From positions 1,178,001 through 1,242,000 of the forward strand of contig CDROCS010000288.1 of assembly GCA_977020255.1 (NCBI GenBank): DNA of 64,000 bases, given 5' to 3'. This stretch comes from Obrimoposthia wandeli. Its lineage: Eukaryota. Below the pieces are notes generated by a model. That model was not told where the DNA came from, did no database searches, and saw nothing but the letters and a program-made list of their open reading frames with translations. Position numbers and translations under genes: made by a program. This document shows positions 5,331 through 60,244 of this stretch, in pieces. Numbering within the stretch: the first letter of the stretch is position 1; each line of letters opens with the position of its first letter.

Positions 5331-5340
5331 TATGAAATCT

Positions 5341-11846: not shown

Positions 11847-11896
11847 CTGATTACCTATTTAATTTATCTATTTTTAAAATCATAACAAATAATTAC

Positions 11897-13528: not shown

Positions 13529-13607
13529 ATTTCACACATGCACGATTTTAAAGGACATGGGTACCCTTCTTATGAGGTGTGGATTAGATCAGACACATCC
13601 ACCTACT
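13529..13607 (-). repeat. Right TIR of Maverick copy 1
   Basis: Reverse complement reads AGTAGGTGGATGTGTCTGATCTAATCCACACC...TCCTTTAAAATCGTGCATGTGTG. Confidence 0.88.
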
Positions 13608-21417: not shown

Positions 21418-21561
21418 TCTAAAATAAGGAAACTGATTAAAAACAATGTTTATAACAAAAAAAACATATAAGATACAAATATTTAAAAAATAAAACTGAT
21501 TATTAATTGCCAAATGAAAGAAACATAGTAAAACCGATTACAATTTATTACATGAAAAAAG

Positions 21562-22014: not shown

Positions 22015-22044
22015 CGTTGATAATTGTCTTTGATATGAATGCAT

Positions 22045-22275
22045 TTACTGTGATTTGTCCTCCAATGGCGCATTCTTTTATACTAATTTCTAACAAAAAT
22101 ATGAATCACATTGGTTAATATAACAAAAGCATTCAATTTGATTGGACTAAATTTGATTGGAAGAGATATATCATCCAATTATAATAGGTTTGCAAGATAA
22201 TTACAAGAAACGTGCAATAAAAAAGCAGTTTCAAACATATATAAAGAAGATTTTACAGAATACAATTTTAGTCTA
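22045..22275. promoter_or_regulatory. Candidate bidirectional promoter
   Basis: Lies between divergent ORFs; TATA-like GTATAAAAG on the minus strand (~22074-22082), TATATAAAG on the plus strand (~22238-22246), and several ATTGG/CCAAT boxes between them. Confidence 0.45.
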
Positions 22276-22731
22276 ATGAAACTCGTAAATATAAATTATA
22301 AAGGTAGAACAGAAGATGATGTTTCGTACTTACCATTCAATAAATGGAAGCCGAGACAATATGTGGAAAAGGTTGACAATTTCACAGTTGTTATTTTTGA
22401 AATGAAGAAAATACAAAGAAGCATACCCTATTTTAAAGCTTTAGTCAAAGCCTCTTCTCGTAAGAGAATGATTATTCTTAAAGCATTTCCATCTTTTGTT
22501 GTAGATGATTTATTGGAAGTTTTGTATAATATAGTTTTGGGTAGAGTAAAAGTTAGAAAACGGAAAAATGTATTAAAGAAATATAGAAAAGCTTTTCTAG
22601 ATATTGTTAATGTAAAAAGTAAAAAAAGGAAACGAAATATTATTCTTAAACAGAATGGTGGTTTCAAAGGGGCTGTTATTCCAGTTGTTGCTTCAATTAT
22701 CAGTAGTATTATAGCTGCGACACGTTCATAA
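22276..22731 (+). CDS. Small basic Maverick core protein (PW-like); the probable start is the internal MKKIQR
   Basis: Basic helical protein ending ILKQNGGFKGAVIPVVASIISSII, matching the recalled Polinton pattern LxQxGGFL..L.P. Confidence 0.7.
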   Translation: MKLVNINYKGRTEDDVSYLPFNKWKPRQYVEKVDNFTVVIFEMKKIQRSIPYFKALVKASSRKRMIILKAFPSFVVDDLLEVLYNIVLGRVKVRKRKNVLKKYRKAFLDIVNVKSKKRKRNIILKQNGGFKGAVIPVVASIISSIIAATRS

Positions 22732-22817
22732 ACAATTATTTATAAAATCAGCTAAAAATATGGGTGCTAACCCTTCTTTATCTAAATTTAAATTTTCTTT
22801 CTATTAAAATTGTTGTA

Positions 22818-23844
22818 ATGGAAAAGATATGGTTCAATCCAAAAGATCCAATTGGCTACACAGGAGTTTCAAAATTATCAAAAAGAACAAAACAAAATTA
22901 CAAGAAAACGCAGAAATGGTTGAGCAACCAGTTAGCCTACAGTCTGAACAAGCCGATGAGAAGAAGGTTTCCAACTAGAGCTTACAAAACCAGCGGTCCT
23001 AATAATTTATGGCAAATGGATTTGATGGAGATGATCCCATATTCTTTTATTAATAAGGGATATCGATATATTTTAACATGTATTGATGTATTTAGCAGGT
23101 TTGCTCGTGTAATTCCAGTTAAAGCAAAGTCTTCAATAGCTATGCTTGAAGCCATTAAAGAAATATTAAAAGAGGACATTCCACAAAATGTGCAAACTGA
23201 TTTAGTAAAAGAATTTTATAATAAGCAAGTTCAATTATTATTTAAACAAAATAATATAAATCACTACTCTGTATTTTCACAGTACAAAGCAGCAGTAGTA
23301 GAAAGATTTAATTGTACTTTGAGAGATCGACTAAAAAAGTATTTCACAAAAGAATGAAATAAAAAATGGGTCCAAGTTTTAACTAAAATAATACATGCAT
23401 ATAATCACTCTGAACATAGAAGTCTCAAGGGAATGAGACCTGTTGATGTTACTAATAAAAACTCTATGGATATTTGGATAGACAGGAATAAAAAAGAAAA
23501 TATTAAAAGAGCTAAATATAAGAAAAACGAATATGTTCGAATTTCTAAAATTAGCTCTACTCCATTTATTAAACATTTTGATGAATTGGAGCGATGAAAT
23601 ATTTTGTATAAGTAAAATTGATCAAAAGAGTAATCCAATAATGTATACTATTAAAGATGCTGACAATAATATCGTTCACAGTAAATTTTATGAGCAAGAA
23701 CTACAAGTAATATCAAATAAACCTAGCGTTTTCCGTATTCAAAAAATATTAAAATCTAAGGGTACAGGTAAACATAAACAATACTTTGTTAAATGGCATG
23801 GTTATTCAGACCCAACTTGGATATCAGCATCTAATATAATATAA
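22818..23844 (+). pseudogene. Maverick integrase (rve DDE plus C-terminal chromodomain), disrupted
   Basis: WQMDL, LTCIDVFSR, VQTD..KEF, KAAVVERFN, HAYNHS.HR..GMRPVDV, YFVKWHGY..PTWI; in-frame stop at 23355-23357 and a frameshift near 23590. Confidence 0.93.
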
Positions 23845-23849
23845 AGTCT

Positions 23850-24890
23850 ATGTATATGGTTTTACCTAGTAACAGATGTCCGAAGACTCAACCAGATAAT
23901 TACGCTAGTAGCTTTATTATCGATTGGGATAAATCTCCAAGGAAAATGGAAAGCGGCTTTAACAGCGGCTTCTCCAATTACTATCAGAAAAATCTCACAT
24001 ATTTCGTTTACAAAAGAAGTTGATCATGAAAAATCAATTGAAGTTGTGATCGGGTTTAATAGTAAAGGAAAATTCTATTACAATTGTATAGATAAAGAAG
24101 TGAAAGTTATATATGAAAAAAACAAAGTCAGATTTAAAAATCGAATAAAACATTTTAAACCTATTCAAATTATATTCGAATCTGGAAAAGAAGCTCTTCA
24201 ATTCGCTGTTGACAGTGGACATGTAGTAGGTATGAAGAGATCTGATATAGCCTCATCTAAATCGGTTAAAAATGTTCCTGGTAGAGTAACAAGAGTGTTT
24301 TTAGTTGAAATGAGACCAAAGTATGTAGTGGAACTGAAAATGTTTTCAAAAGATTATAAAATAGATAGTGAACTAATTTCTGTTAATTAATACAGAAGGA
24401 ATGTAGAGAATATTTGTATAAATGTGAAACATTAAAAAATGGTAAAATAACGTTAACAGTAAAGAGCAATATAAAACGAGTTTTATTTGATAATAAACTC
24501 GCTAAAAACCTTGGTTTAAACAGAAATACCTTTGAAACCAATACAATAAAAACCATCAAAGCTAAAAATAAGGCAAAACTTTTACATGCTGTTAATCATT
24601 TATATATTTATACTAATTTAATAGAACCAACGCTTGTAGGAGGACAGCGAGTTCCACTTTTGAGAACAATATGGATATCTAAAAATGAAACTAGAGATGG
24701 GGATACTGTCGGTATGTGTATAGATCAACCAATGTATCTTCCAGTTTCTCTCTTTTCTATAAAAAATATTGAAGTAAATATTAGAGATGATTCCGGGCAA
24801 CTAATAGATTTCACGTACGGGTCTAAGACAAGTTTAACAATACATTTAAGAAAACAAAATGGCGAATCCAGCAATAATGGAAGCTTATAG
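23850..24890 (+). pseudogene. Maverick minor capsid (penton-like), disrupted
   Basis: MYMVLPSNRCPKTQPDNYASSF...YIYTNLIEPTLVGGQRVPLLRTI...PMYLPV...IEVNIRDDSG. Confidence 0.85.
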
Positions 24891-24957
24891 ACAAAGCCAA
24901 CAAGGTGGAGAATTACCATATTTTGTTGGTAAACAATATGGATCTGGCTGGCTTAGA
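24859..24957 (+). pseudogene. PZ-like core protein N-terminus, truncated by a deletion
   Basis: MANPAIMEAYRQSQQGGELPYFVGKQYGSGWLR, followed by an abrupt switch to MCP sequence. Confidence 0.7.
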
Positions 24958-25097
24958 ATTTAATATTAATGGTTCCAATAGCGAATATTAAGATTTGAAT
25001 GATACCTTGCTTTATGTTCAAATAAAAGTATTAAATCGTGATGGTACTAATTTAGAGGAAAATGCCAATGTAACACCTGTAAATTATCTCTTTAATT
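24953..25097 (+). pseudogene. Internal MCP fragment between two deletion junctions
   Basis: LEFNINGSNSEY*DLNDTLLYVQIKVLNRDGTNLEENANV; homologous to 8575-8712. Confidence 0.75.
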
Positions 25098-25099
25098 GT

Positions 25100-27299
25100 A
25101 GCATTTAGGGCGTAGGAAAATACAATCATCATACAAAACCTGTCCCTCGCTTTCATACTTAAATTTCCCGATAATATCCTTTAAACTCATAGAGTGTCAA
25201 TATAATAAAGCATATATTCAAGAAGATTTCGACAATTATTCGCCCAAAATGTACAGGCCTCATTATAGTCTTGAAGACTTACACTTTCAAATTCAGTTAT
25301 GGTGGGATTTCAGTTGTATTTTCTAAATCTGCAAAGGTTTTCGCAAATTTATACGGAAAAATCCCCTTATCGTTAACTGAAGCTGGGAACACTGGCTGTG
25401 TAATTGGCCATGCATTTAAAGATGCTGTTAAATTTTTTAAAGACCCACTCAAAAACTGCAGAGAATCTATGAATCTTAAACTGCAGGATTCAGTAGTATA
25501 TGCAGTTAAAGATAAATATTTCTCTGAAGTTTGAGGTATACATGAAATTTCCCAAGAGCTTAATGTACCCAACGCATATTTAAGTATATGATGCAAATCA
25601 TATCCTTTGAGGTTATGAAACACGATGGAAATTTGTGGTTTTTTAGGGAGACGACGGCCAAGGTTACAGAGGTGGCACGCCGCTCCCAAGTATCGCCCCG
25701 TAACATGATCGTGACCTCTGACTAACTTAGCCTGGATTCCACACAAATAACATAATCTACAAGAATTAAAATTAACCCAGTCTATGCCTCCCATGATCAT
25801 TGCTTGATGAGCATTAAGATCATACCACGGTTTGACAATTGTTGTTCCTAATTCTTCTAATTTTAACATAAAATCTAAAATACAATTTGGACCGGAAAAT
25901 TTATGATACTGTGTAAAATTGAGGCCTAAGAATAATAGTCCTGCCGAAGCCGGTAGGTGAATACTGTCATACTGGTCGTGCAATGCTAGAATTGACTCAA
26001 AATCTGCATACACTCTGAATTCCACGGGTATGCATTTTGCCCAATCCCTGAATTTTAAATCCCTATCCTTAGGCATGCTGAATAGCGTATTGTCATCAGG
26101 ATTCAGTGAACATAATGTCAGATGTTTGCTGTAAAAGAGCTCGGATCGGAATCCATGTAAACATCTATGACTCCACTTACATCTTATCCTAACCGGTAAG
26201 GCTCCATTATCTAAATTTAGAAGACAATCTAAACTGGGAATTGCAGCATAATGGATTTTTTTATTATTTTCAAGAAAAATTAAGTTGACCTGAGTCCCCT
26301 AATTTTTGCTCCTATAAATTACATCTACAAATGGATTTTTTAAAAATTTTTCATCTGTTACATTAACTGGGATATCAGTATTATATTTAAATACATTAAT
26401 ACTCAAGTTATTAAGGTGTTCAAATCTTGATATTGCAGTTAATTTAACAGGATACTGCCGTGATACTGCAATGTTTTAAAAAAATCTCAGTAATTACATC
26501 CCTTTTGAGGATGGCCAACACGCTATACAGAAAGCAAAGATTATCACTATTTTGTACGTTAACAATAGAACGTGAAAGTTGAAGAGATCTAGGTGAAGGA
26601 ATGTATGAACTCCCCGAAAGAAATATAATGTCAGTGAACTTTGTAAGACAAAGCTAACGTCGTGAATTCTAACTAGAGTCCATCCATTACTTAACTCGCT
26701 ATAATTAGCAATTTTTTCATCTAGGTTTCTCCCAATTTCAGTTACAAAATTATCATAGAAAACAGTTGCTTTATGTGAAATTACCCAAGTTTTAGTCTCC
26801 TCATTGACATTTTTAAACTGCACTGTTGCGCAAAATTGAACCTTAGCCTGTCCTAATTTGGTCACCTCTGATTTTAAAAGATTTTCAATATTTGAATCTA
26901 CACCTACGTTTAATAAAATTTCATTTCCTAATGGCACCTTAACTATAACATATTTATTATTTAGGTGATACTCTATAGTAGCACCATTTTCTCTACGTTG
27001 TTTTAGTGGGACCTTATTAAGAAATTGGCCTCGCCTCTTTCTTCCTACAGTCGCTGACAAACCTCCCCCTAATTGAACGGGAAGACAACTATTTATATTA
27101 ACAGTTGAGACAAACGCAGCTGAGGTTGACGGTGCTGCTATTGGTGATGCTGCCGACGTTGAGGCAATCGCAGCTGATGTAGTAGATGTTGCTGTAGTAG
27201 ATGCTGCTGTAGTAAGTGCTGCCGCAGTTGTAGATGCTGCATTTGGAATAGTAGCCGGCATTGCCGATGAAGAAGCGACTGTTGTAGAGGTTGATGCTG
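25100..27299 (-). pseudogene. pPolB with terminal-protein region; ~1.1 kb of the polymerase core is deleted relative to copy 1
   Basis: GWTLVRI, SYIP.P.SL...IVNVQNSDNLCFLYSVLA, VYADFESIL, DHDHVTGRYLGAAC..CN, FHNLKGYDLHHI, RFIDS.QFL, KGIFPY; jumps to IGKFKYE near 25200. Confidence 0.92.
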
Positions 27300-27346
27300 C
27301 TGAAATAAATATATGAAAAAATAAATGTATTTTTCAATATTATTAC

Positions 27347-28210
27347 TTCTAAGACGTGCTAACATCGATGTAGGCACTCGCGATGGGAGAGGCATAGCTG
27401 TCGTAGCGGATGACGACTGTATCACGGTATTTCTTGAATAAAAAATAAAAATAAAGTATATATAATTACAATAATATATATTTAATTTAAAAAAATATAT
27501 ATATATAATTACAATTTTAAAAAATAATCTGAAAATAATAATAAAAAATACCTAATGAAGGCAATCCAATTGTAGCTGGTTGGAAGTCCTCTTCATTGAC
27601 GGAATCCATCCAGCTGTCGTCCGTTAACTCGACGAAATCGGATTCCTCGATGGTCTCCAACCAGGAGTTATCGCTCCACTTAGGCTGCTCCATCTCGAAA
27701 TCTGACTGGGTGATATTTTCCATCCATTCATTGTTTGAGAATTGGGTTGCTGGCGCCAACTCCTCAAAATCTTCTTGGGAGATGTCATTCGTCCACTCAT
27801 TATTAGTCATTTGAGTGGATGGTGCAGCAGCAGAATCAGGAACCGGGAGAGAAGGACCAATAGCAGGACCGTAAAAGGGTTGAACGACTGCAACTGGAAT
27901 TGGAGCAGGAGCTGAAGCGGCTTGCGAATCGCGCACCAATTGCACTATATCCCTCTTTTTGTTGTTGGCCGTTAAACAGGATAGGTGATCTCGATGTTCA
28001 CCGAAGAATTCTCGAAACTTCTCTCAGAAGGGGCAGACGAAGAAGTGAAGCCCGCGAGACTTTGTCCGATAGTAGGCGGACATTATCTCCATGCAGGTCT
28101 CTCCTCCATGCGGAGCCGAAGCACCACAATACGCAGGGAATAGGTTACACGTAATCTGAAATAATAAATATTAATAAAGAAATAATAAATATAGATTCTT
28201 ACCATAGTCA
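27347..28210 (-). pseudogene. Spliced leader exons upstream of pPolB in copy 2
   Basis: ATGACTATG|gtaaga...tttcag (intron ~28201-28156). The large exon encodes C/H-rich VCPF*EK..EHRDH and four W-x3-[IV]-x3-DF repeats. Further introns at 27551-27433 and 27346-27300. Confidence 0.68.
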
Positions 28211-28249
28211 TTATTTCAAATAGTCGGGGATTTAAATGAATAAAGTGTT

Positions 28250-28470
28250 TGCTTTTATACTAAAATTTATGCACACATGCTCTTTTCCTATTGGATGAAA
28301 AATTTGAATTTATTCCTCCACTGAGAAGGATTGTTTATCTGTTATTGGTTGATAAATTTATTTTTAATATTTTTATTCCTCCAATTAAAAGGCTTATTTG
28401 TAATTGAATGAAAAATAGATTTTTTAAATAATGAATTTCTCCAATTAGAAGAATTGTTTATCTACATGTC
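28250..28470 (-). promoter_or_regulatory. Candidate promoter of the spliced leader-pPolB unit
   Basis: TTAGTATAAAAG ~45 nt upstream of the first ATG, preceded by three copies of a (TC)CTCCAATTAGAAG(G)A-like CCAAT-containing repeat. Confidence 0.45.
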
Positions 28471-29349
28471 AAATAATAAAAAGATTGACTTAAACAATTT
28501 TTTATATGCGCAATGGTCACCATGATTAGATATGGACAGCAAATATTTTTTGGAATTTTTAATAGATGATCACGTGAAATATTTAAAGTATTCAACCTCA
28601 ATTTGGGAAAATATTTTTTAAAGTCTTATACTTTTTGCCATCCATTTCATCTAAAACATAAAAAATTCTATTTTCTATATCAAAATTAGATTTTATTGTA
28701 TCGAAATACATATTTCACAAAAAGCCTTATGTCCTTCTTTCCATTTTAATAAATGAAAGTAATTAGTTAGATATAAATTAGTAAATTTTTTCTTATAATC
28801 TAAACTTTTAAACGGGATATCTATCTGAAATATGAAATGCAAAGGATGAAAAACGTCGCATACATCCATAATACATAATTATTTTATAATATAATCACCA
28901 TTTTTGTTAAAGAAAGCCTCAAAATCTATGATATATTTCTGCATAATTACCCAAATTTGTAGCAAATCCCTTTGTTTATAACGAATAAAAAAATTATTAA
29001 TCAAAAATTTATTAAAATAACACAGTACTCAGGATTCAGTCTTTCATATTAAGATTGGTATATATTGTCAATTCTCCTAAGAATATTAAAATAAATTATA
29101 TTACATGTAAACATACCTAAATATTTCGAAATTAAATTACATAATTTATCTCCAAAAATTTCCGGAGTATCATTTTCTGAAAAGTAATTTTTTTTATAAT
29201 CTTCCATTAAATCTCGAGTTAATTTTATGTATAATTTATTCCAATTTTTATTATCCATTTACAAAAACATTATATATAAATTTGTTTATATTTAGACAAT
29301 TATGTAACATAATCAATAAAGACGAAATAATAATCAAAAATTAATTTTT

Positions 29350-46446: not shown

Positions 46447-49143
46447 TATATACAATTTAAATGATTAAACAATTGCTTTCATCTGATCACTGGATAAATG
46501 AAAAATAATAAAACAAAAACCAATGATGTGTTGAAGTAAATTTGTTCATATATTTAAGATTTTTGCGCTTTAAAAACTTATTTATCTTATCTTAACAATT
46601 TACTTCGACAAAAAATCGTTCATTTTGAAAAGATCTTATATTTCTTAGCGTTGTTGTTAGTTTTGTTTTATAGTTTATCATTACCGTAGACTTGTACTTT
46701 TTAGATTTTATCGCTTATGCATTCTTCACGTATCAATTTACTAATTTATGCAATTCTAAGACACCTAAAAGCTCCGTTCTTTCACGTCTTTTGTCAAGCT
46801 TTCTTTGAGTCATCACGTACTAATAATATCAGATATATCTGCACAAGATATGGTTGTCTAGTTGATTATTTAATTAACAGTCAGTCAACGACTAAATTAG
46901 TTCAACGCGTACTTTAGAGTAGATATAATAAGCAAAAATAACATTTTTTGGGGTAAAATTGATTGATCATAATTTATTTTATAGACATTTAAGACAATTT
47001 AGAGATTATAATTGACTTTTTCGTCAAAATAAATAAAACATTTTTTTAAAGCACTCAATGCATTCACAAACTGAAAAAAACACAGCCAAATTCTAAGGGA
47101 CTGTTTTCTATTTACAAATTTTATTAATATAACTAGATGAAGATATATAAAGAATAAAGAAATAGTTTTAGTACTAGTTTGAATGTCAAAGCAAAATAAT
47201 GACGCTGTAAAGAATCAGTTTATTCCGGATATGGGTTATAAAAATGAGACATAAAATAACATTTAAAACCATTCCGTATATATTTCGAACTTTTATTTTG
47301 TTAATACTTTGTCAATCCTCAGCAACCAAAGGGACAAATGAAACGATTTTTAAAATTATTCTATAGTTCATAAAAACAAATAATATCATATAATTATAAA
47401 AAACCATTGAAATGTTGTATAACTAATATTATAGTTCATAAATGTTTCGATTCAATTAAAAATAACAAATTAAACATTATCTGTCTATACGTTACACTAT
47501 TTTGAAAGGCTGCAATTTTCTTGACTTACAGCGAACTCAAGTGATAATTATAAACAGCAACGATTTATATATTATTCGACCGATGATTAAATTATATTCT
47601 TATTTAAAAAGATTTTTTCAGGAATCAGCATATTAATATAAAAGGGTAGCATTCAAAATTTCAACTGATTTTGTTTTAAAAAATCGATTATTTCAAATTT
47701 AAGATTTGTTTACAAAGAAATTAAAAATCGTAAGTTTCGTAAATTATTCAGGAAATATAAATTGTAAAATATTTTAATTCTAAATTTTCTGAAAGTCCAT
47801 TGATTTTGTAGGTTACACTACGATTTATAAATAAAACTAAAAGTTAATAAACTTATTTTTAATTTTCAATTTTGATACACAAATTCAGTGACGAGGGCTT
47901 AATTCTACTTTTCCATTAAATTGCAATTACATATGAAAAATGTTATAGTAAAAAAATTTAAAGATTTTTTTATAAAATATTTCTGATTTTTAGACACATT
48001 AAGGGGAATAAAACCAAAATAAATTCACACAAAAATATCTTTCTTTAAAATTAACGTTTTTAAGGGTTGATAAAAATGACAGGGGTGTTTCAGCAGTATT
48101 AGTGGAAAGGAAATGTAGATTTTGTGAGAACATTTAGGTACATATTTGTAACAATACCTTCATTTATAATTTTATACACATTATAATTTGAAGATCATCA
48201 TCACCGGTGTCAGTAAAATTTCAAGTAAAGCCAAAAATGATCGAATGTCTCAGTAACTTTGCGAAGGATATGTTAGACACATTTCAAACTACTGATGCAC
48301 ACTGAACACAAGGAAACATTTCTCAGATGACCGTTTCTTCGATCAACTAGAAGAAACTGACATTTTCAATGATTAAATGACAATTTAGAAATATGTATAA
48401 TAAATGGTGGACCGTAAAACGGGAAGTTCACTGCTCGATGAACTTACAGTTACAAAGTACGACTGTGATTCTCATTAATTGCGAATGAATTTTATACACT
48501 TTGAAAGACAAGCCCGACTTATTTCGATAAACCATTCTCAGAGAAAAGGTTGTGTCAATTCCCAGAACTCAGCACTCTGAAAGCAACTTACTTCTGGAGG
48601 AAGTGAATCCCTATTTCACAGCTAAAGTACAGTCCCAATTTTGTTGCATTTTTAAATTGGTAGAGTGTAGATATATTATCCTGCCACTCTGCTCAAATGA
48701 AGTTTCTTTTCACAGTTTGCCGTATTGATCTGCATGATTGCCACAAACTTAAGCTGGGACTCTTTTGTCATTACTGCAGAAGCAGAAGGAGTGGCTACCC
48801 CATATGCCCACTGGAACTCTGTAATTTGGCAAGCCGCATAGTTGGTTGTTCGGGAACTTAAGGAAAAGATCAAGCCTCGGCATTGCTTCCACTATCAAGA
48901 TCTGCAGGAGTGTCAAATAGGGACATATTTGACTTATATATAACATTAGGTTAAAGAAAGTGCAGAATTGAAAATTTATTGAATATCGATTGTGTTCAAT
49001 TAAAACCTGGGTCTCACATTGACTCCGGATATCCGTTGATTTTACTACTAGGATCATTACGCAACACTTGTACAATTGTAAAATCATGTATACATTCTAT
49101 AAGTCACAAATGCACTATATGATAGTAGGTAGAAGGATGAAGT

Positions 49144-49304
49144 CTAGATCACTTGACCCCCCCTAAAGGGTGTCACACCATAAAGATGTCTTGCCACACC
49201 ATAAGAGTATATGTTGCCTCACCTCTGGTGAGGCAACATATACCCTTATGGTGTGACACCCTTTAGGGGAGGGGAGGGGGAGGGGGAGGGGTCAAGTGAT
49301 CTAG
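49144..49304. other. Subterminal hairpin with a G-rich bulge (left; the mirror copy is at 58152-58335)
   Basis: CTAGATCACTTGACCCC...ATATGTTGCCTCACC-TCT-GGTGAGGCAACATAT...GGGGTCAAGTGATCTAG; G4-like (G4-5A)n at ~49266-49291. Confidence 0.92.
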
Positions 49305-49371
49305 TCTCCACCCTTCTTTGATATACCACTAAAGGGTTGTGGTCGACCATAATTCAAAGGGTCAAGTGGTC

Positions 49372-49470
49372 TAGTCTCCACCCTTCTTTTTGTGATATAG
49401 TCTCCACCCTTCTTTTTGTGATCTAGTCTCCACCCTTCTTTTTGTGGTCTAGTCTCCACCCTTCTTTTTG
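49372..49470. repeat. Tandem ~24-bp repeat TAGTCTCCACCCTTCTTTTTG(T/G)G x4 (mirrored at ~57986-58085)
   Basis: Direct reading. Confidence 0.88.
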
Positions 49471-51329
49471 GCTAACCACTATGATCGTCCATAATTCAAA
49501 GGATCAAGGTCAATTTTGACTTGAAACTTTGAAGGTATAATTAAGATCATGTGAAAGTTCGCACTTAAAGGTTAAGGAATGTATTACGTAATAATACACA
49601 TACTATTCTATGTGAAAATCAAGGCTAAAGTTCACTCTTATCAGTTAAGGAATGTGGTTTTTAACACACACACTATTCTATGTGAAAGTTTAGATCAAAA
49701 TTTTTTTCCTAGGCTCATACATTTATAGAATTATGATAAAATTTCTTTAAATAACTTAAATTATATATTAAAATAAAAAATAAAATAAGAAAGAAGTCAG
49801 AGAATAATACAAAATTAAACATATTTAATATGTAATTTCATAATATCATCTTCAAACTTAAGTGAATAACATTTGTAAAGTAAGAAAATCCATTCTTTAT
49901 ACATTCTTTCCGATTTAACAACTAAGTTACAACGGAATTAATAGAAAAAGAAAAAAAACAAAAAAACAACAACACTAAGTTTAACGCTATGAATGAAAAT
50001 TAGTAAAATATTAATTTATTTGAATATTTGAATGAAGGTTTGAAAAAAAAAATGAGAGTTAGATTGAATGTAAATGAATACAAGTATGAATGCAAATGAA
50101 TGCAAATACAAGTAAGTGTCTTAGTAAGTGAATGTAATTTAAAAATAAGAGTGTCGATAGTTTGATTGAATGCGAGTGTAATTTAGACTATAAGTAAATT
50201 AAAATAGAGTTTTCGTATGAATAAAGTTATGTTAAGTTACAGTAAATTAATAACAAGTAAGCAACTATAAGAAGCAGTGATATTGAAGTATGTTAAAAAT
50301 TAGAACGACTAAGTTATGGCAAGATTAATAGAAAACAACACCAAATTTGACAGTATGAATGAAAATTAGTAAAATATTAATGTATTTAAATGTATTTGAA
50401 TGATAGTTTGAATAAATTACAGTTAGATTGAATGTAAATTAATGCAAGTATGAATGCAGGGTCAAGTACAAGTAAGAAAGAATACGCAATATGCAAGTAC
50501 GAATGTCAATTATGAATGAAAATTAGTAAATATATTAATGAATTTGAATGTTAGTTTAAATATATGAGAGTTAGAATGAATGTAAGTGAATGCAAGTATG
50601 AATGTAAGTGAATGCAAATATGAATGCAAATACAAGTAAGAATCTTTGCAAGTGAATCTTAAACTACAAGTGAGTACTAGCTAATTATTAAATTAATACT
50701 ATCAATCAATGAAGATGATGTAAGTTATGATGAAGTTATAATAATTAAGATGCGAACTTTCATATTTTCACATAGTTTACTTCCATATTAAAGTTAACCT
50801 TTCATACATACTCATGCAATTAAATAATTAAAATGTCTTATCTCGTTTGATAAAATTCCTTAATTAAAATATTTTAAATAATTAGATAAATTTAAATTCT
50901 TTATTTTTAAATAACTTGATTATAAATTTATATTCGTAAATATAATTGAAATTATCAATATTCATTTCTCTTTTTAACTATTCGAAAATATATTTATATA
51001 CAAATTTAGTAAATTAACTCAACAAACAATTTTATTTTTTTTAATTACTTGATATTTTTGTCATTGTCTTATTAATATAATATGAATATTCAATTTATTT
51101 CTTCAAAAATTCATTTTTATATGTTAAATAATATTTCTTTATCACATTATTGTGGTTTTTATCAAGTGATTTTAACCTTAAACTATAAAAAATATTTTAA
51201 TTATAAAGTTAGTAGCTGTATTCCGTCGACTGCATATAATATAAATTTTAAATATAAAGTACTATTAAATGTATTCTTTCAAATGGTAAAAGTTCTTTCG
51301 AATTATTTAATTTTGTTTACATTCGAAAA

Positions 51330-52440
51330 TTGACTTGTAAATATAATATTATAATTTTGCATATATTCACTTTAATATGTTGTAAGTTATTACTTTAATA
51401 TAATTTACAACCTAAACTTCAAGTAATTTACTTAATAATCTTAATATTAATGATTTGTTCGATAAATTGACTTGTAAACATAAAATATTTAAAACAAACT
51501 TCAAGTAGTTTACATATTAATCATAATTTAAGGATTTGTACAATAAATTGACTTGTAAACATAATTTATTGTGCATATTCATTTAATATATTGTAAGTTA
51601 ATACTGTAATATTTCATTACATGAAATGTAATTCATAGTTTACTGTCGTTTACAATAAATTGACTTGTAAACATAATTTATTTTGCATATATTTAGTTTA
51701 ATACGTTGTAAATTATTACTGTAATATTCCATTACATAAAAAAGTAATTGATATTTTACTGTCGTTTACTATAAATTGACTTGTAAACATAATATATTTA
51801 TGCATATATTAACTTTAATATGTTGTAACTTATTACTTTAATATCATTTTCAACAAAAACTTCAAGTAGTTTACTTATTAATCATAAGTTTAATGTTTTG
51901 TATCTTAAATTGACTTGTAAACATAATTTAATATGTTGTAAGTTATTACTTTAATATTCCATACCATAAAATTAATTGATATTTTACTATCGTTTACTAT
52001 AAATTTACTTGTAAACATAATATATTTATTCATATATTCACTTTAATACGTGTAAGTTATTACTTTATTATAATTTACAACAAAAACTTCAATTCAGTTT
52101 AATATATTGCAAGTTAATACTCTAATATTTCATTACATAAAAAGTCATTGATAGTTTACTATCGTTTACAATAAATTTATTTGTAAACATACGTTATTGT
52201 GGTATTTTATCAAGTGATTTTAACCTTAAACTGTAAAAATATTTTAATTATAAAGTTAGTAGCTGTACCTCACCGACTGCATATAATATAAATTTCAAAT
52301 ATAAAGTACTATTAAGTTTATTATTTCAAATAGTAAATGTTTTTTCGAGTTATTTAATTTTGTTTACTAGACATTCGAAAATTGACTTGTAAACATAATA
52401 TAATTTTGCATATATTCACTTTAATATGTTGTAAGTTATT
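51330..52440 (+). repeat. AT-rich satellite, forward polarity (core AAATTGACTTGTAAACATAAT)
   Basis: The core recurs at roughly 80-200-bp intervals within mosaic subunits. Confidence 0.9.
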
Positions 52441-52779
52441 CGAACTTGTGTACTTGTACAAAATTTGTAGATATTTCAATAATTAAAAGCGATATAAAAG
52501 TTAATTATCAAATAATAAATAAAAAATAGTTAAATTAAATCTAATTTATGATGTTGCAATGCTAAATTCTTCTTTAAAACCAATGTTTAACATGAAATAC
52601 TTAAAATCAATGGTTTTTTTTTTTATTTTTTTTATTTTTAAAAGTAACTTTATTTAAACGTATTGGTATATGATTGATATAATACAATACTAAACTAATG
52701 TAAATTTCAGTTATGAGTTGATCAACTATGAATATTTTTAACTTATTTCTTGATTTTTACAACATTTCGAATAGTTTAC

Positions 52780-55700
52780 TTAATAATCATAATATTAATA
52801 AACTATGAATTACTTTTTATGTAATGAAATATTACAGTATTAACTTACAATATATTAAATTGAAAATATGCAAATTATATTATGTTTACAAGTCAATTTA
52901 TTGATCAAATCATTAAAATTATGATTAATAAGTAAATTACTTGAAGTTTTGGTTGTAAATTATATTAAAGTAATAACTTACAACATATTAAATTGAAAAT
53001 ATACCAAAATAAATTATGTTTACAAGTCAATTTATTGTACAAAACATTAAACTTATGTTTAATAAGTAAACTACTTGAAGTTTTTGTTGTAAATTATATT
53101 AAAGTAATAAGTTATAACATATTAAAGTTAATATATGCATAAATATATTATGTTTACAAGTCAATTTATAGTAAACGACAGTAAAATATCAATTACTTTT
53201 TATGTAAAGGAATATTACAGTAATAATTTACAACGTATTAAATGAATATGCACAATAAATTATGTTTACAAGTTAATTTATTGATCAAATCATTAAAATT
53301 ATGTTTAATAAGTAAACTACTTGAAGTTTTTGTTGTAAATTATATTAAAGTAATAACTTACAATATTTTAAACTGAATATATGCAACAACAAAAAATATT
53401 ATGTTTACAGGTCAATTTATTGTACAAAACATTAAACTTATGTTTAATAAGTAAACTACTTGAAGTTTTTGTTGAAAATTATATTAAAGTAATAACTTAC
53501 AACATATTAAAGTGAATATATGCATAAATATATTATGTTTACAAGTCAATTTATTGTAAACGATAGTAAACTATCAATTACTTTTTATGTAATGTAATAT
53601 TACAGTAATAACTTACAACGTATTAAAGTGATATATGTATAAATATATTATGATTACAAGTAAATTTATTGTACAAAACATTAAACTTATGATTAATAAG
53701 TAAACTACTTGAAGTTTTTGTAGTAAATTATATTACAGTAATAACTTACAACATTTTAAACTGTATATATGCAACAACAAATAAATATTGTAGTTTACAA
53801 GTAAATTACTTGAAGTTTTTGTTGTAAATTATATTAAAGTAATAACTTACAACATATTAAATTGAAAATATACCAAAATAAATTATGTTTACAAGTCAAT
53901 TTATTAAAAAAAACATTAAACTTATGATTAATAAGTAAACTACTTGAAGTTTTTGTTGAAAATTATATTAAAGTAATAAGTTACAACATATTAAAGTTAA
54001 TATATGCATAAATATTTTATGTTTACAAGTAAATTTATAGTAAACGACAGTAAAATATCAATTACTTTTTATGTAATGGAATATTACAGTAATAACTTAC
54101 AACGTATTAAAGTGATATATGTATAAATATATTATGATTACAAGTAAATTTATTGTACAAAACATTAAACTTATGATTAATAAGTAAACTACTTGAAGTT
54201 TTTGTTGAAAATTATATTAAAGTAATAACTTACAATATTTTAAACTGAATATATGCAACAACAAAAAATATTATGTTTACAGGGGTCAATTTACAACGTA
54301 TTAAACTAAATATATGCAAAATAAATTATGTTTACAAGTCAATTTATTGTAAACGACAGTAAACTTTGAATTACTTTTTATGTAATGAAATATTACAGTA
54401 TTAACTTACAGTATATTAAATTGAATATATGCATAAATATATTATGTTTACAAGTCAATTTTCGAATGTCTAGTAAACAAAATTAAATAACTCGAAAAAA
54501 CATTTACTATTTGAAATAATAAACTTAATAGTACTTTATATTTGAAATTTATATTATATGCAGTCGGTGAGGTACAGCTACTAACTTTATAATTAAAATA
54601 TTTTTACAGTTTAAGGTTAAAATCACTTGATAAAATACCACAATAACGTATGTTTACAAATAAATTTATTGTAAACGATAGTAAACTATCAATGACTTTT
54701 TATGTAATGAAATATTAGAGTATTAACTTACAATATATTAAACTGAATTGAAGTTTTTGTTGTAAATTATAATAAAGTAATAACTTACACGTATTAAAGT
54801 GAATATATGAATAAATATATTATGTTTACAAGTAAATTTATAGTAAACGATAGTAAAATATCAATTAATTTTATGGTATGGAATATTAAAGTAATAACTT
54901 ACAACATATTAAATTATGTTTACAAGTCAATTTATGATACAAAACATTAAACTTATGATTAATAAGTAAACTACTTGAAGTTTTTGTTGAAAATTATATT
55001 AAAGTAATAAGTTATAACATATTAAAGTTAATATATGCATAAATATATTATGTTTACAAGTCAATTTATAGTAAACGACAGTAAAATATCAATTACTTTT
55101 TATGTAAAGGAATATTACAGTAATAATTTACAACGTATTAAATGAATATGCACAATAAATTATGTTTACAAGTTAATTTATTGATCAAATCATTAAAATT
55201 ATGATTATTAAGTAAAGTACTTGAAGTTGTTTGTTGTAAATTATATTACAGTAATAACTTACAACATATTAAATTGAAAATATACAAAAAAATATACTAT
55301 GTTTACAAGTCAATGTATTGTACAAAACATTAATATTATGATTTATTAAGTAAACTACATGAAGTTTTTGTAGTAAATTATATTACAGTAATAACTTACA
55401 ACATTTTAAACTGTATATATGCAACAACAAATAAATATTGTAGTTTACAAGTAAATAACTTGAAGTTTTTGTTGTAAATTATATTAAAGTAATAACTTAC
55501 AACATATTAAATTGAAAATATACCAAAATAAATTATGTTTACAAGTCAATTTATTAAAAAAAACATTAAACTTATGATTAATAAGTAAACTACTTGAAGT
55601 TTTTGTTGAAAATTATATTAAAGTAATAAGTTACAACATATTAAAGTTAATATATGCATAAATATTTTATGTTTACAAGTAAATTTATAGTAAACGACAG

Positions 55701-56125
55701 TAAAATATCAATTACTTTTTATGTAATGGAATATTACAGTAATAATTTACAACGTATTAAACTAAATATATGCAAAATAAATTATGTTTACAAGTCAATT
55801 TATTGTAAACGACAGTAAACTATGAATTACTTTTCATGTAATGAAATATTACAGTATTAACTTACAATATATTAAATGAATATGCACAATAAATTATGTT
55901 TACAAGTCAATTTATTGTACAAATCCTTAAATTATGATTAATATGTAAACTACTTGAAGTTTGTTGTAAATATTTTATTTTTACAAGTCAATTTAATGTA
56001 CAAATCATTAATATTAAGATTATTAAGTAAATTACTTGAAGTTTAGGTTGTAAATTATATTAAAGTAATAACTTACAACATATTAAAGTGAATATATGCA
56101 AAATTAAAATATTATATTTACAAGT
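52780..56125 (-). repeat. The same satellite in reverse polarity, with higher-order duplications
   Basis: The core ATTATGTTTACAAGTCAATTT recurs ~20 times; the block starting at 53741 is repeated at 55391 (1,650-bp offset). Confidence 0.9.
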
Positions 56126-58355
56126 CAATTTTCGAATGTAAACAAAATTAAATAATTCGAAAGAACTTTTACCATTTGAAAGAATACATTTAATAGTACT
56201 TTATATTTAAAATTTATATTATATGCAGTCGACGGAATACAGCTACTAACTTTATAATTAAAATATTTTTTATAGTTTAAGGTTAAAATCACTTGATAAA
56301 AACCACAATAATGTGATAAAGAAATATTATTTAACATATAAAAATGAATTTTTGAAGAAATAAATTGAATATTCATATTATATTAATAAGACAATGACAA
56401 AAATATCAAGTAATTAAAAAAATAAAATTGTTTGTTGAGTTAATTTACTAAATTTGTATATAAATATATTTTCGAATAGTTAAAAAGAGAAATGAATATT
56501 GATAATTTCAATTATATTTACGAATATAAATTTATAATCAAGTTATTTAAAAATAAAGAATTTAAATTTATCTAATTATTTAAAATATTTCAATTAAGGA
56601 ATTTTATCAAACGAGATAAGAAATTTTAATTATTTAATTGCATGAGTATGTATGAAAGGTTAACTTTAATATGGAGGTAAACTATGTGAAAATATGAAAG
56701 TTCGCATCTTAATTATTATAACTTCATCATAACTTACATCATCTTCATTGATTGATAGTATTAATTTAATAATTAGCTAGTACTCACTTGTAGTTTAAGA
56801 TTCACTTGCAAAGATTCTTACTTGTATTTGCATTCATATTTGCATTCACTTACATTCATACTTGCATTCACTTACATTCATTCTAACTCTCATATATTTA
56901 AACTAACATTCAAATTCATTAATATATTTACTAATTTTCATTCATAATTGACATTCGTACTTGCATATTGCGTATTCTTTCTTACTTGTACTTGACCCTG
57001 CATTCATACTTGCATTAATTTACATTCAATCTAACTGTAATTTATTCAAACTATCATTCAAATACATTTAAATACATTAATATTTAATAATTTTCATTCA
57101 TACTGTCAAATTTGGTGTTGTTTTCTATTAATCTTGCCATAACTTAGTCGTTCTAATTTTTAACATACTTCAATATCACTGCTTCTTATAGTTGCTTACT
57201 TGTTATTAATTTACTGTAACTTAACATAACTTTATTCATACGAAAACTCTATTTTAATTTACTTATAGTCTAAATTACACTCGCATTCAATCAAACTATC
57301 GACACTCTTATTTTTAAATTACATTCACTTACTAAGACACTTACTTGTATTTGCATTCATTTGCATTCATACTTGTATTCATTTACATTCAATCTAACTC
57401 TCATTTTTTTTTTCAAACCTTCATTCAAATATTCAAATAAATTAATATTTTACTAATTTTCATTCATAGCGTTAAACTTAGTGTTGTTGTTTTTTTGTTT
57501 TTTTTCTTTTTCTATTAATTCCGTTGTAACTTAGTTGTTAAATCGGAAAGAATGTATAAAGAATGGATTTTCTTACTTTACAAATGTTATTCACTTAAGT
57601 TTGAAGATGATATTATGAAATTACATATTAAATATGTTTAATTTTGTATTATTCTCTGACTTCTTTCTTATTTTATTTTTTATTTTAATATATAATTGAA
57701 GTTATTTAAAGAAATTTTATCATAATTCTATAAATGTATAAGCCTAGGAAAAAAATTTTGATCTAAACTTTCACATAGAATAGTGTGTGTGTTAAAAACC
57801 ACATTCCTTAACTGATAAGAGTGAACTTTAGCCTTGATTTTCACATAGAATAGTATGTGTATTATTACGTAATACATTCCTTAACTTTTAAGTGCGAACT
57901 TTCACATGATCTTAATTATACCTTCAAAGTTTCAAGTCAAAACTGACCTTGATCCTTTGAATTATGGACGATCATAGTGGTTAGCCAAAAAGAAGGGTGG
58001 AGACTAGACCACAAAAAGAAGGGTGGAGACTATATCACAAAAAGAAGGGTGGAGACTATATCACAAAAAGAAGGATGGAGACTAGACCACTTGACCCTTT
58101 GAATTATGGTCGACCACAACCCTTTAGTGGTATATCAAAGAAGGGTGGAGACTAGATCACTTGACCCCCTCCCCCTCCCCCTCCCCTCCCCTAAAGGGTG
58201 TCACACCATAAAGGTGTCTTGCCACACCATAAGGGTATATGTTGCCTCACCAGAGGTGAGGCAACATATACTCTTATGGTGTGGCAAGACATCTTTATGG
58301 TGTGACACCCTTTAGGGGGGGGTCAAGTGATCTAGACTTCATCCTTCTACCTACT
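54390..58355 (-). repeat. Right arm of the giant inverted repeat
   Basis: See left arm; only scattered substitutions are visible by eye. Confidence 0.92.
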
Positions 58356-60244
58356 TATGATGGTTATAATCGCGTTAGTTTAAATAAAATCAGACAATCT
58401 GATCAAAATAAAATTTCAAACGGCGAAACAAAAAATTGAAGCGTTGGAGTTTCTAAATGAACAAAAAAACTTCCAACATCTCTAGATTGAGAGGAAAACG
58501 ATCTAATGACAATTGAGGATAACTTAATCTATGTACTTTGTTATTTTTTAATATGGTAAATTCCATAAACTTAATAATGTATAAAATATTTATCATTTAT
58601 AATTTGTAATTTAATTTTTACAATAATTGAACTAGAATCTCTGATAAGTTGTATTCAAAATTTCTATTAAAATAGATTTGATTTGTGCCTCAATTTTACG
58701 CAAACAGACGATTAAATATTCAGGAATAATCATTTTGGGACTGTAATGTATTCTGTTTGTTCTAATTATGTTTCTTTTATTCATTTGAATGATAACTGAA
58801 CTTTGACCACATCGACCCATAACCGAACGACGATGGCTATCGATCGAGCGAATTGGCCGTGCCCCTGAGACTGATGCTGATGACGAGGAATTAATTGACC
58901 CTTGAGGAGTTCGCTAAGCATGCGGAGCTGAAGAAAACTGCCACTTATCTTCTGACGATTCTCTCTCACTCTCTATCCGACACAATTTATCTCAATTATC
59001 CAATTTGATTGCTCTCCAATTAAATTCGACTAAGAGGACGACCTTCTTAACTGATAATCACAGTTTTAATCGAAAGTTATACCACATAAATAAGTAGACT
59101 TTCTCTAACTCTGTATTTTCTAATTATCCTTTTTGTAAGTAATAGATAACCGGTTTCACGGTGAGTAATTATCGACCATAAGCAGCAATACCTGAAAGTT
59201 ATATAAATGCTCAGACACTGTTTATTCTTAATACGTGATGTGGATAAAAGGTACCCATGCTTGTATTAAAACAAATAACATATCAAATCAGAATTTTATA
59301 TTTAGGTTACAAAAATAGAAAACATTTGACATAATATCGTGTGACTTGTTTTCCAAATAATTGTCTACAATCATCATTTGGCTTTTATCACGTAAATGTG
59401 ATTTTTAATTAGCAAACGGCCAAGAATTGGACTGAATGGAGGCAAAAGGGTGTTGCAATGCCATCAGTCCACTAGTGTATATTGTTACTAATGTGACTTT
59501 TATCATGGGTTTGAAGTGTTGTTGTACCGCCAAAAGGTGGATTTCTTTTCATTTCTGTTGTATTTCGATTACAAGGTTAGAATGGTAATGGCTTTTGATA
59601 TTTCCAGGAGTAAGTCTACCTGTAAACATGCTCAACGTCAAGTATTTACAATACATCCATTTAAAAAGAGACAAATTGGGGTTTCTTCTTGGGTGATAAC
59701 ATTGTCTAAAATGTTTCTCCAAATTGATCAAACAGTTTCAAGTTCGAAGTGCATGCAGCCAAGCGATTTTCATCATCTCGCTAGCCGTAAACTTAGGTAC
59801 GAACCTGGGTCGTATAAGGGGAATTTCTGGTGCTTAATAAATTATGATTGACAATCTCATTTATAAGAAATACAATTCATTGAACAACGTTAGTTTCCAC
59901 AAAAGTAAACTTCACATAAATGCATTCTTTTGTCATCGCACTCATTTGAAAGTTATTGATTAAACAGCGGTTTGTAGGGATATATATCATTTGAATTCAA
60001 ACTCCTGTGTGTAGAGGTATGTGATACTTCTAATCCAGCTGGTAAATGATGAGATGTGAAACATCTGTTTTCATTTCATCTTTAGCAGGGGAAAATGAAA
60101 GGTTAGCGAACAGAACATATGCTGTAAAATTAGCGAATCTGAATTAGTGAGATTACAACTATGATAGGAATTGGGGAAAAGTTTTAATTCTGTGAGATTC
60201 TTCACAAGCAGATGATGCTATTGAATGTATGATACATTCTAAAC

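What the first reader, a model, noticed from the sequence alone, without database searches (positions are those of the whole stretch)
49124..58355. Gene-less 9.2-kb palindromic element with Maverick ends and a perfect 6-bp TSD: a candidate non-autonomous 'fold-back' parasite of Mavericks
Seen: the termini AGTAGGT...ACCTACT share their first 7 nt with the coding Mavericks at 4191, 13607 and 20630, and the next ~30 nt are loosely similar (GGATG...GTCTA.AT.CAC...CCCC). TATGAT is duplicated exactly on both flanks. The inverted arms exceed 3 kb, differ only by scattered substitutions, and contain no coding sequence. Established: a 6-bp TSD with 5'-AG...CT-3' ends is the Maverick/Polinton integrase signature, and their TIRs are normally hundreds of bp up to about 1 kb. 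Inference: the element was integrated recently by a Maverick integrase supplied in trans, although the local coding copies are long dead. It may keep only the ends needed for protein-primed replication and integration, like a snap-back defective genome or satellite of a polintovirus. At ~9 kb it might also be packaged.
Basis: partly seen in the sequence, partly recalled or inferred. Interest (0 to 1): 0.92.

Follow-up and report, generated by a model that had tools for sequence, protein, structure and literature searches.

The report
Gene-less fold-back transposon with Maverick-type ends
A 9.2-kb, gene-free, almost palindromic mobile element in a flatworm-like genome carries the end motif and the 6-bp insertion footprint of Maverick/Polinton virus-like transposons, so it is most likely a non-autonomous hitch-hiker of that family; only one copy could be examined.

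Summary
Window 49124-58355 (9232 bp) starts AGTAGGTAGAAGG, ends with its exact reverse complement, and is flanked by a perfect 6-bp duplication, TATGAT. The arms are 3.3 and 3.95 kb. Their 2.2-kb unique parts differ by 10 substitutions and 5 indels. No ORF exceeds 83 aa, and nothing matches Pfam or Maverick proteins.

The interior is 14-25% GC. It holds a ~134-bp satellite that flips orientation around a ~320-bp unique centre and is expanded on the right side.

The ends match the resident degraded Mavericks in register: 7/7, 18-20/30 and up to 24/40 bases, which puts all three Maverick ends in the top 12 of 109,042 window positions. They also fit the published Maverick end motif (AGT)2 at 5 of 6 bases.

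New findings: each end is a 207-228-nt hairpin (z -11 and -17), and a 17-bp terminal motif recurs five times, inverted, in each arm.

Best reading (about 0.65): a non-autonomous Maverick-superfamily element with fold-back architecture, inserted recently by an integrase supplied in trans.

The snap-back, satellite-virus and packaging ideas are untested. No other copy and no autonomous partner could be found, because the host genome is not in any searchable collection.

The parts
49118..49123 (.). Left copy of the 6-bp target-site duplication, TATGAT
   Evidence: Read directly; identical to 58356-58361; cannot be extended by a base on either side.
58356..58361 (.). Right copy of the 6-bp target-site duplication, TATGAT
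   Evidence: Read directly.
49124..58355 (.). The whole element, 9232 bp, with ends AGTAGGTAGAAGG... and ...CCTTCTACCTACT
   Evidence: No blastn similarity to the rest of the window.
49124..52438 (+). Left inverted arm, 3315 bp (unique part 49124-51326, then satellite)
   Evidence: Inverted-repeat blocks I1-I4, 98-99% complementary. The unique part is 99.5% identical to the right arm.
54402..58355 (-). Right inverted arm, 3954 bp (unique part 56132-58355). It includes an extra 614-bp satellite block at 55102-55715 that is absent from the left arm
49124..49330 (+). Left terminal mini-foldback: the terminal ~39 nt, an inner palindrome, a G-rich (GGGGA)n tract at 49266-49291, and an inverted copy of the terminal sequence that ends ...ACCACT
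   Evidence: Folds as a single DNA hairpin, -66.6 kcal/mol, z -11.4, 0 of 200 shuffles as good. Alignment of the pseudo-end with the true right end.
58128..58355 (-). Right terminal mini-foldback, 228 nt. Its inner palindrome is complete, whereas the left one lacks 21 nt
   Evidence: -95.9 kcal/mol, z -17.3; the 21-nt indel is.
49366..49470 (-). Left subterminal array of four 26-bp repeats. Each holds the 17-bp motif AGAAGGGTGGAGACTAG in the orientation opposite to the terminal copy at 49131-49147. A fifth inverted copy lies at 49301-49317
   Evidence: TRF: period 26, 4.0 copies, 94% matches. Motif search: 12 hits against 0.03 expected, all inside the element.
57986..58090 (+). Right subterminal array of four 26-bp repeats. 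A fifth motif copy lies at 58139-58155 and the terminal copy at 58332-58348
51327..52438 (-). Satellite of ~134-bp monomers (with 81- and 116-bp variants), left side, minus orientation relative to the reference monomer 52829-52962
   Evidence: The monomer occurs nowhere else in the window.
52440..52760 (.). Unique, non-palindromic, AT-rich centre (~320 bp) where the satellite orientation flips
52829..56131 (+). Satellite array, plus orientation, 3.3 kb. It is expanded relative to the left side, with higher-order periods of 385 and 484 bp
4191..13607 (+). Comparator: degraded Maverick copy A with both ends AGTAGGTGGATG... Its flanks GAGAAA and GAGGTA are not a perfect TSD. The integrase is broken (3 aligned pieces in 2 frames; its N-terminal part is not found)
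20630..28823 (+). Comparator: degraded Maverick copy B. It has a left end, a PX-like gene, an rve integrase (2 pieces in 2 frames) and a DNA_pol_B_2 fragment on the minus strand. The right end was not found

Best explanation
The element is a non-autonomous, gene-less member of the Maverick/Polinton mobilisation group with a fold-back architecture: two 3.3-3.95-kb inverted arms around a small unique centre.

Shown:
- It is a discrete insertion with exact inverted termini and a 6-bp staggered-cut footprint.
- The termini carry the Maverick-type AGTAG start. They resemble, in register, the ends of the bona fide (now degraded) Mavericks in the same window.
- The arms are 99.5% identical in their unique parts, so the insertion, or the last homogenisation of the arms, is much younger than the resident Mavericks.
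- The element encodes nothing.

Inferred:
- A Maverick rve-type integrase bound the terminal ~30-40 bp and inserted the element at TATGAT. It came in trans from an autonomous lineage with matching ends. That lineage is not copy A or copy B.
- The 17-bp terminal motif, repeated five times per arm in inverted orientation, serves as an array of secondary protein-binding sites. This is by analogy with the subterminal repeats of other DNA transposons.
- The satellite in the arms grew and shrank independently on the two sides.

Whether the element is also copied by the Maverick protein-primed polymerase is unknown. The retained AGTAG end repetition is compatible with that.
For: - Exact 6-bp TSD and perfect termini.
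- A 6-bp TSD is the Polinton length (PMC10045372, PMC8097293).
- Published Maverick end motifs are 5'-(AGT)2//(ACT)2-3' or (AG)3//(CT)3 (PMC8097293). The element has AGTAGG//CCTACT, 5 of 6 bases, and is identical over 7 nt to the three Maverick ends in the window.
- In-register similarity is 18-20/30 and up to 24/40. All three Maverick ends rank in the top 12 of 109,042 positions, and the end at 20630 is the unique maximum at n=40.
- The Maverick identity of the comparators rests on rve and DNA_pol_B_2 hits and on collinearity with an intact relative, L001, which carries PX, integrase and further genes.
- The element has no coding capacity.
- The arms show K2P 0.0046, against 81-83% identity between Maverick copies A and B.
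- The 17-bp motif gives 12 hits against 0.03 expected.
- Non-autonomous Polinton families are already catalogued, for example Polinton-1N1_DR, named in PMC9341505.
- The closest protein hit points to a planarian-type host. Dugesia planarians are reported to have expanded Mavericks (bioRxiv 10.64898/2025.12.11.693146).
Against: - Only one copy was seen. No second copy and no autonomous partner with the same ends was found in any collection I could search. None of these collections is expected to hold the host genome.
- Similarity to Maverick ends stops after about 40 nt and is only about 60% there.
- The sixth base of the end motif departs from (AGT)2.
- The arms are more than twice the longest TIR reported for vertebrate Mavericks (1447 bp, PMC8097293).
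- The terminal hairpin and the inverted motif array are absent from the resident Maverick end (z -0.9).
- The 6-bp TSD is also produced by IS3EU/GingerRoot (PMC10045372).
Confidence: 0.65

Rival explanations
1. Fold-back type non-autonomous element of a different DNA-transposon superfamily, either one that also makes 6-bp TSDs (IS3EU/GingerRoot) or an undescribed one. On this reading the resemblance to Maverick ends is coincidence or convergence.
For: Long, internally repetitive TIRs with subterminal repeat arrays are the hallmark of Foldback and Galileo-like elements, not of Mavericks (PMC3573991). IS3EU/GingerRoot make 6-bp TSDs and occur in animals (PMC10045372, PMC6839031 abstract). Similarity to Maverick ends is limited to about 40 nt.
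Against: IS3EU/GingerRoot termini are TA..TA or TG..CA (PMC10045372). Here they are AG..CT. Galileo makes 7-bp TSDs (PMC3573991). The three Maverick ends are among the 12 best in-register matches of 109,042 positions, which is hard to get by chance. The window holds no transposase gene of another superfamily; the only other TE protein hit is a Pao/BEL peptidase fragment.
Confidence: 0.15
2. One reading: the element is an integrated copy-back ('snap-back') defective genome of a polintovirus. One genome end would have been duplicated in inverted orientation by a polymerase strand switch, and the product then integrated. It may behave as a satellite.
For: The element is palindromic over about 70% of its length with a small unique centre. 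Both termini keep the end-motif repetition that is thought to serve jumping-back in protein-primed replication (PMC8097293). Each end can fold into a long hairpin.
Against: Any TIR transposon has two like ends. In copy B genes start about 1.8 kb from the end, so arms copied from a Maverick end should run into genes within about 2 kb. Instead they hold 2.2 kb of unique non-coding DNA plus satellite, with no protein or nucleotide similarity to Mavericks. The asymmetric satellite arrays show later or independent growth. No parent element is known. Reported Maverick sizes cluster near 17 kb (PMC8097293).
Confidence: 0.1
3. Composite origin from a small MITE-like unit. The terminal 207-357 bp, which has its own left end and internal pseudo-right-ends, would be the real mobile unit. 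The 9.2-kb element would be a long derivative that captured or amplified AT-rich satellite DNA between two inverted units.
For: 49124-49330 is a self-contained fold-back whose inner edge aligns with the true right end. A second pseudo-end at about 49480 is followed directly by TATGAT, the same hexamer as the TSD. GC content drops from 35-46% in the terminal ~600 bp to 14-25% inside.
Against: The sequence after the second pseudo-end is a paralogue of the sequence after the first, so it is element-internal repeat and not foreign flank. The palindrome runs uninterrupted through the boundary at 99% identity. The recurrence of the hexamer could be chance.
Confidence: 0.1
4. Not a mobile element: either an assembly fold-back artefact or an in-situ inverted duplication.
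For: Long near-perfect palindromes are a known failure mode of long-read assembly. This is general knowledge and was not tested here.
Against: Distinct unique flanks on both sides carry a direct 6-bp duplication, not an inverted copy of the left flank. The arms differ by 10 substitutions, a 21-nt indel and a 614-bp block, and the centre is unique and off-axis. The termini are exact and Maverick-like.
Confidence: 0.03

Closest known systems
Maverick/Polinton elements and their catalogued non-autonomous derivatives (e.g. the Repbase family Polinton-1N1_DR, named in PMC9341505)
   Same: 6-bp TSD. 5'-AG...CT-3' ends with an AGTAG-type end motif. In-register similarity of the first 30-40 nt to bona fide Mavericks in the same window. 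Long TIRs.
   Different: No polymerase, integrase, capsid, protease or ATPase gene, and no remnant of one. The arms are 3.3-3.95 kb, against 46-1447 bp in vertebrate Mavericks (PMC8097293) and about 2 kb in some butterfly polintons (bioRxiv 10.1101/2025.02.07.637071). Each end has a terminal hairpin and an inverted 17-bp motif array, and the interior is satellite. None of these features is seen in the resident Mavericks.
[quoted passage not shown]
   Same: Copies consist almost only of long, internally repetitive inverted arms. Tandem repeats inside the arms expand and contract independently on the two sides. Subterminal repeats are proposed as secondary transposase-binding sites.
   Different: Galileo makes 7-bp TSDs and has P-type ends. 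From memory, Foldback makes 9-bp TSDs. Here the TSD is 6 bp and the ends are Maverick-like. The resemblance is in architecture, not in family.
IS3EU/GingerRoot DNA transposons (PMC10045372)
   Same: 6-bp TSD, a DDE integrase-like enzyme, and presence in animals.
   Different: Their termini are TA..TA, occasionally TG..CA. The element has AG..CT.
Copy-back (snap-back) defective genomes of protein-primed linear dsDNA viruses. I had adenovirus defective genomes in mind; this is from memory and no paper was retrieved
   Same: A linear palindrome carrying the same replication end on both sides.
   Different: This element is integrated with a TSD. It has a 320-bp unique centre and asymmetric satellite arrays, and no parent genome is known.

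Membership tests
Maverick/Polinton (mobilisation group) | 6-bp target-site duplication | tested here: met
   TATGAT at 49118-49123 and 58356-58361, exactly 6 bp. The family feature is taken from PMC8097293 and PMC10045372.
Maverick/Polinton (mobilisation group) | 5'-AG...CT-3' termini with a short repeated end motif, (AGT)2//(ACT)2 or (AG)3//(CT)3 | tested here: met
   AGTAGG//CCTACT matches (AGT)2 at 5 of 6 bases and is identical over 7 nt to the three Maverick ends in the window. The sixth base departs from the vertebrate motif in both the element and the resident Mavericks.
Maverick/Polinton (mobilisation group) | Terminal inverted repeats homologous to those of an autonomous Maverick | tested here: inconclusive
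   18-20/30 and 19-24/40 in register, top 12 of 109,042 positions, but nothing beyond about 40 nt. No autonomous element with the same ends was found.
Maverick/Polinton (autonomous element in the strict sense) | Encodes a protein-primed family B polymerase and an rve integrase, usually with capsid proteins, protease and ATPase | tested here: not met
   Longest ORF is 83 aa. No Pfam hit and no tblastn hit to Maverick proteins. It can therefore be filed only as a non-autonomous element with Maverick-type ends, not as a Maverick.
Maverick/Polinton (mobilisation group) | Several copies, each with a different 6-bp TSD | not testable with these tools
   The host genome is in none of the searchable DNA collections. 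The motif occurs only inside this one element in the window.
Foldback / Galileo-type elements | Long, internally repetitive inverted arms making up most of the element | tested here: met
   Arms are 3.3 and 3.95 kb of 9.2 kb, with 26-bp and ~134-bp tandem repeats.
Foldback / Galileo-type elements | TSD of 7 bp (Galileo, PMC3573991) or 9 bp (Foldback, from memory) | tested here: not met
   The TSD is exactly 6 bp.
IS3EU/GingerRoot | 6-bp TSD | tested here: met
   PMC10045372.
IS3EU/GingerRoot | TA..TA (or TG..CA) termini | tested here: not met
   The termini are AG..CT.
Dada transposons (6-7-bp TSD; features from memory) | Insertion into multicopy small-RNA genes | tested here: not met
   No Rfam family in 48000-59500 at gathering threshold.
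Copy-back defective genome of a polintovirus | Arms collinear with one end of a parent genome | tested here: inconclusive
   No similarity of the arms to Maverick copies A and B or to the intact relative L001 beyond about 40 nt. A parent with the same ends is not available.

The most novel reading that the evidence does not exclude
The element is more than an integrase hitch-hiker. On this reading it is a gene-less replicon parasite of a polintovirus. Its hairpin-forming ends and arrays of inverted terminal motifs would let the helper's terminal protein and polymerase copy it, and it would compete with the helper. That would make it the first defective-interfering or satellite-like companion of Mavericks in an animal genome.
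Probability: 0.1. Interest if true: 0.8.

Novelty: new variant of a known kind. Interest (0 to 1): 0.45.

Why it matters
Mavericks/Polintons sit on the border between transposons and viruses, and little is known about which DNA features their integrase and protein-primed polymerase need in cis. A young, completely gene-less element that keeps only about 40 nt of Maverick-like terminus would mark out those cis requirements by natural experiment. It also carries its own hairpin and a five-fold inverted motif array. It would further show that Mavericks, like P, hAT or Mutator elements, support fold-back type parasites that seed satellite DNA. The practical value depends on finding further copies and the helper element in the source genome.

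Tried and rejected
1. Other copies in public DNA. Exact-pattern scans gave nothing. I scanned the terminal 24-mer in viral contigs, the subterminal motif in metagenome contigs and in prokaryote genome contigs, and the resident Maverick end in metagenome contigs. None of these collections is expected to hold a flatworm genome, so the negatives say little.

2. Copies via called proteins. The element's ORFs are not in the 15-billion-protein collection. The GPCR gene was not on record either, so neither the locus nor an empty site could be fetched from another assembly.

3. An autonomous partner via the integrase. A full HMMER scan gave relatives of 49-57% identity. Their contigs are 0.7-6.6 kb and hold no terminus. 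A scan of viral contigs with the intact integrase found nothing.

4. Hidden coding remnants. tblastn of 191 ORFs from the Maverick regions, and of nine proteins of the intact relative L001, against the element gave only noise. Pfam and PHROGs added nothing.

5. RNA genes. No Rfam family in or beside the element.

6. The inner TATGAT as the TSD of an ancestral small element. I considered this and set it aside as unproven, because the sequence after it is an internal paralogue.

7. Assembly artefact. Rejected on internal evidence, namely the TSD, distinct flanks, arm differences and off-axis centre. No reads were available to check.


Full report
**1. Observation**

The element occupies window 49124-58355 (9232 bp).
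- It begins AGTAGGTAGAAGG and ends with the exact reverse complement.
- The hexamer TATGAT lies directly outside both ends, at 49118-49123 and 58356-58361. The bases next to it differ on the two sides, so the duplication is exactly 6 bp.
- The inverted arms are 49124-52438 and 54402-58355. Ungapped blocks are 98-99% complementary.
- A global alignment of the unique 2.2-kb parts of the arms shows 10 substitutions in 2201 aligned bases (K2P 0.0046) and five indel events, one of 21 nt.
- The right arm also holds a 614-bp satellite block that the left arm lacks.
- The longest ORF is 83 aa. Nothing hits Pfam or Rfam.
- Neither the ORFs of the resident Mavericks nor the proteins of an intact relative find anything in the element.

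**2. Context**

- The window holds a single-exon rhodopsin-type GPCR ORF at 1522-2949 (-). Its only strong database match is Schmidtea mediterranea GCR368 at 47% identity. The host is therefore probably a planarian-type flatworm other than S. mediterranea, unless this gene is a paralogue.
- The window carries two collinear, degraded Mavericks.
  - Copy A is 4191-13607, with both ends present.
  - Copy B starts at 20630 and is traceable to about 28823. Its right end was not found.
  - A third polymerase fragment lies at about 38409-38949 in inverted orientation.
- Copy B gives rve and DNA_pol_B_2 hits.
- Both copies are collinear with L001, a 6.6-kb Logan contig that carries intact genes: a PX-like gene, a 367-aa integrase and three further genes.
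- A and B are 81-83% identical to each other. In both, the integrase aligns in pieces in two frames, and in A its N-terminal part is not found. The flanks of A are not a perfect duplication.

**3. Are the ends Maverick ends?**

- All three Maverick ends start AGTAGGT, as the element does.
- I scored the element's first 20, 30 and 40 nt, ungapped, against every position of the window outside the element, on both strands.
  - At n=30 the Maverick ends score 20, 19 and 18. All are among the 12 best of 109,042 positions.
  - At n=40 the end at 20630 scores 24, the single best position.
- Within the Maverick family itself only about the first 30 nt, plus a short block near 45-64, are conserved between ends. 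The part the element shares is therefore the part the family conserves.
- In vertebrates, Mavericks have conserved end motifs 5'-(AGT)2//(ACT)2-3' or (AG)3//(CT)3, 6-bp TSDs, and TIRs of 46-1447 bp (PMC8097293). That paper relates the end repetition to jumping-back in protein-primed replication.
- The element's AGTAGG//CCTACT fits the first motif at five of six bases.
- The other eukaryotic group with 6-bp TSDs, IS3EU/GingerRoot, ends TA..TA or TG..CA (PMC10045372).

**4.

- Each end is a self-contained hairpin. The terminal ~39 nt is followed by an inner palindrome, a G-rich (GGGGA)n tract and an inverted copy of the terminal sequence.
  - As single-stranded DNA, the left 207 nt fold at -66.6 kcal/mol (z -11.4) and the right 228 nt at -95.9 kcal/mol (z -17.3).
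  - The end of Maverick B does not fold in this way (z -0.9).
- A 17-bp motif from the terminus recurs five times per arm within the first 345 bp. It is always in the orientation of the opposite end, partly as a 26-bp tandem array. That makes 12 hits against 0.03 expected, all inside the element.
- The resident Maverick ends have no such array of their own terminal motif. Copy B does have an unrelated 25-bp subterminal repeat.
- The interior is 14-25% GC. It is built of a ~134-bp satellite found nowhere else in the window.
  - The satellite runs in minus orientation at 51327-52438 and in plus orientation at 52829-56131.
  - It flips around a ~320-bp unique, non-palindromic centre.
  - The symmetry axis is about 1 kb left of the midpoint because the right-hand array is expanded.

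**5. Interpretation**

Shown steps:
- a discrete insertion with a 6-bp staggered-cut footprint;
- Maverick-type termini;
- no coding capacity;
- arms far younger than the resident Mavericks.

Inferred steps:
- insertion by a Maverick integrase supplied in trans by a lineage with matching ends (copies A and B differ at 16-21 of the first 40 positions and are broken);
- the motif array as secondary binding sites, by analogy with Galileo and other transposons (PMC3573991);
- independent growth of the satellite in the two arms, also as in Galileo.

Replication by the helper's polymerase, a role for the hairpin, and packaging are speculation. The reported size constraint of Mavericks, about 17 kb +/- 10% (PMC8097293), argues against packaging if anything.

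The copy-back origin is possible but not favoured. In copy B genes begin about 1.8 kb from the end. The element's arms instead hold 2.2 kb of unique non-coding DNA plus satellite, with no similarity to Mavericks beyond about 40 nt, and the centre is not palindromic.

**6. Comparison with what is known**

- Non-autonomous Polinton families are already catalogued, for example Polinton-1N1_DR, named in PMC9341505. The kind is therefore known.
- Full-text searches of the held papers returned no description of a gene-less Maverick-type element with fold-back architecture. The Kapitonov and Jurka 2006 paper could not be read.
- In architecture the closest match is Foldback or Galileo 'two-TIR' elements. 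In insertion signature it is Maverick.
- I file it as a new variant of a known kind. It is not a Maverick in the strict sense, because the coding criterion was tested and not met.

**7. Limits**

- Everything rests on one copy.
- No collection available here holds the host genome, so the census, the search for a partner and the empty-site test could not be run.

**8. An unexplained detail**

- The innermost pseudo-end, at about 49480, is followed directly by TATGAT, the same hexamer as the TSD. The mirror copy lies at 57971-57976.
- This could be chance, a target preference, or the trace of a small ancestral unit.
- The sequence after it is an internal paralogue, which argues against the last reading.

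Noticed in passing
window 49480-49485 and 57971-57976: The TSD hexamer TATGAT (ATCATA in the mirror arm) recurs inside each arm, directly after the innermost pseudo-end (...AACCAC). As a result 49124-49479 looks like a ~357-bp unit flanked by the same hexamer on both sides. It could be chance, a target preference, or the trace of a small ancestral element.
   Followed up: partly
window 49124-49132 and 58347-58355: The terminus reads A-GTAG-GTAG, a perfect 4-nt reiteration. The resident Maverick ends read A-GTAG-GTGG. Short terminal reiterations are what jumping-back in protein-primed replication uses (PMC8097293).
   Followed up: no
window 49266-49291 and 58166-58191: A (GGGGA)n / (TCCCC)n tract sits on one side of each terminal hairpin and remains unpaired in the predicted fold. 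It has G-quadruplex potential.
   Followed up: no
window 1522-2949 (-): Uninterrupted 475-codon ORF with a 7tm_1 rhodopsin-family GPCR domain (E 5e-45). The best database hit is Schmidtea mediterranea GCR368 at 47% identity. It is the only evident host gene in the window, and it points to a planarian-type host.
   Followed up: partly
window 4191-13607, 20630-28823, 38409-38949: Three Maverick-derived stretches lie within 64 kb. Copy A is shortened and has imperfect flanks (GAGAAA against GAGGTA). Copy B lacks a recognisable right end. The third is an inverted polymerase fragment about 83% identical to copy B.
   Followed up: partly
window 37096-37335 (+): A 79-aa ORF hits the Pao retrotransposon peptidase family (PF05380, E 3e-8). 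This is a BEL/Pao LTR-retrotransposon remnant next to the third Maverick fragment.
   Followed up: no
window 29360-30260: A GC-richer stretch lies where the right end of Maverick copy B would be expected. It looks like coding sequence on the minus strand but has no Pfam hit. It may be another insertion that truncated copy B.
   Followed up: no
window 7821-8120: A tandem array with a period of about 41 bp (copies 85-95% alike) lies inside Maverick copy A.
   Followed up: no
L001 (Logan SRR25158271 contig, 6586 bp): A fragment of an apparently intact Maverick holds nine called genes. They include a 367-aa rve integrase (49% identical to the copy B integrase ORF over the matched region; best local piece 59%), a PX-like protein and a weak Pox_A32-like ATPase. 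The organism behind that run is unknown, and no terminus is on the contig.
   Followed up: partly
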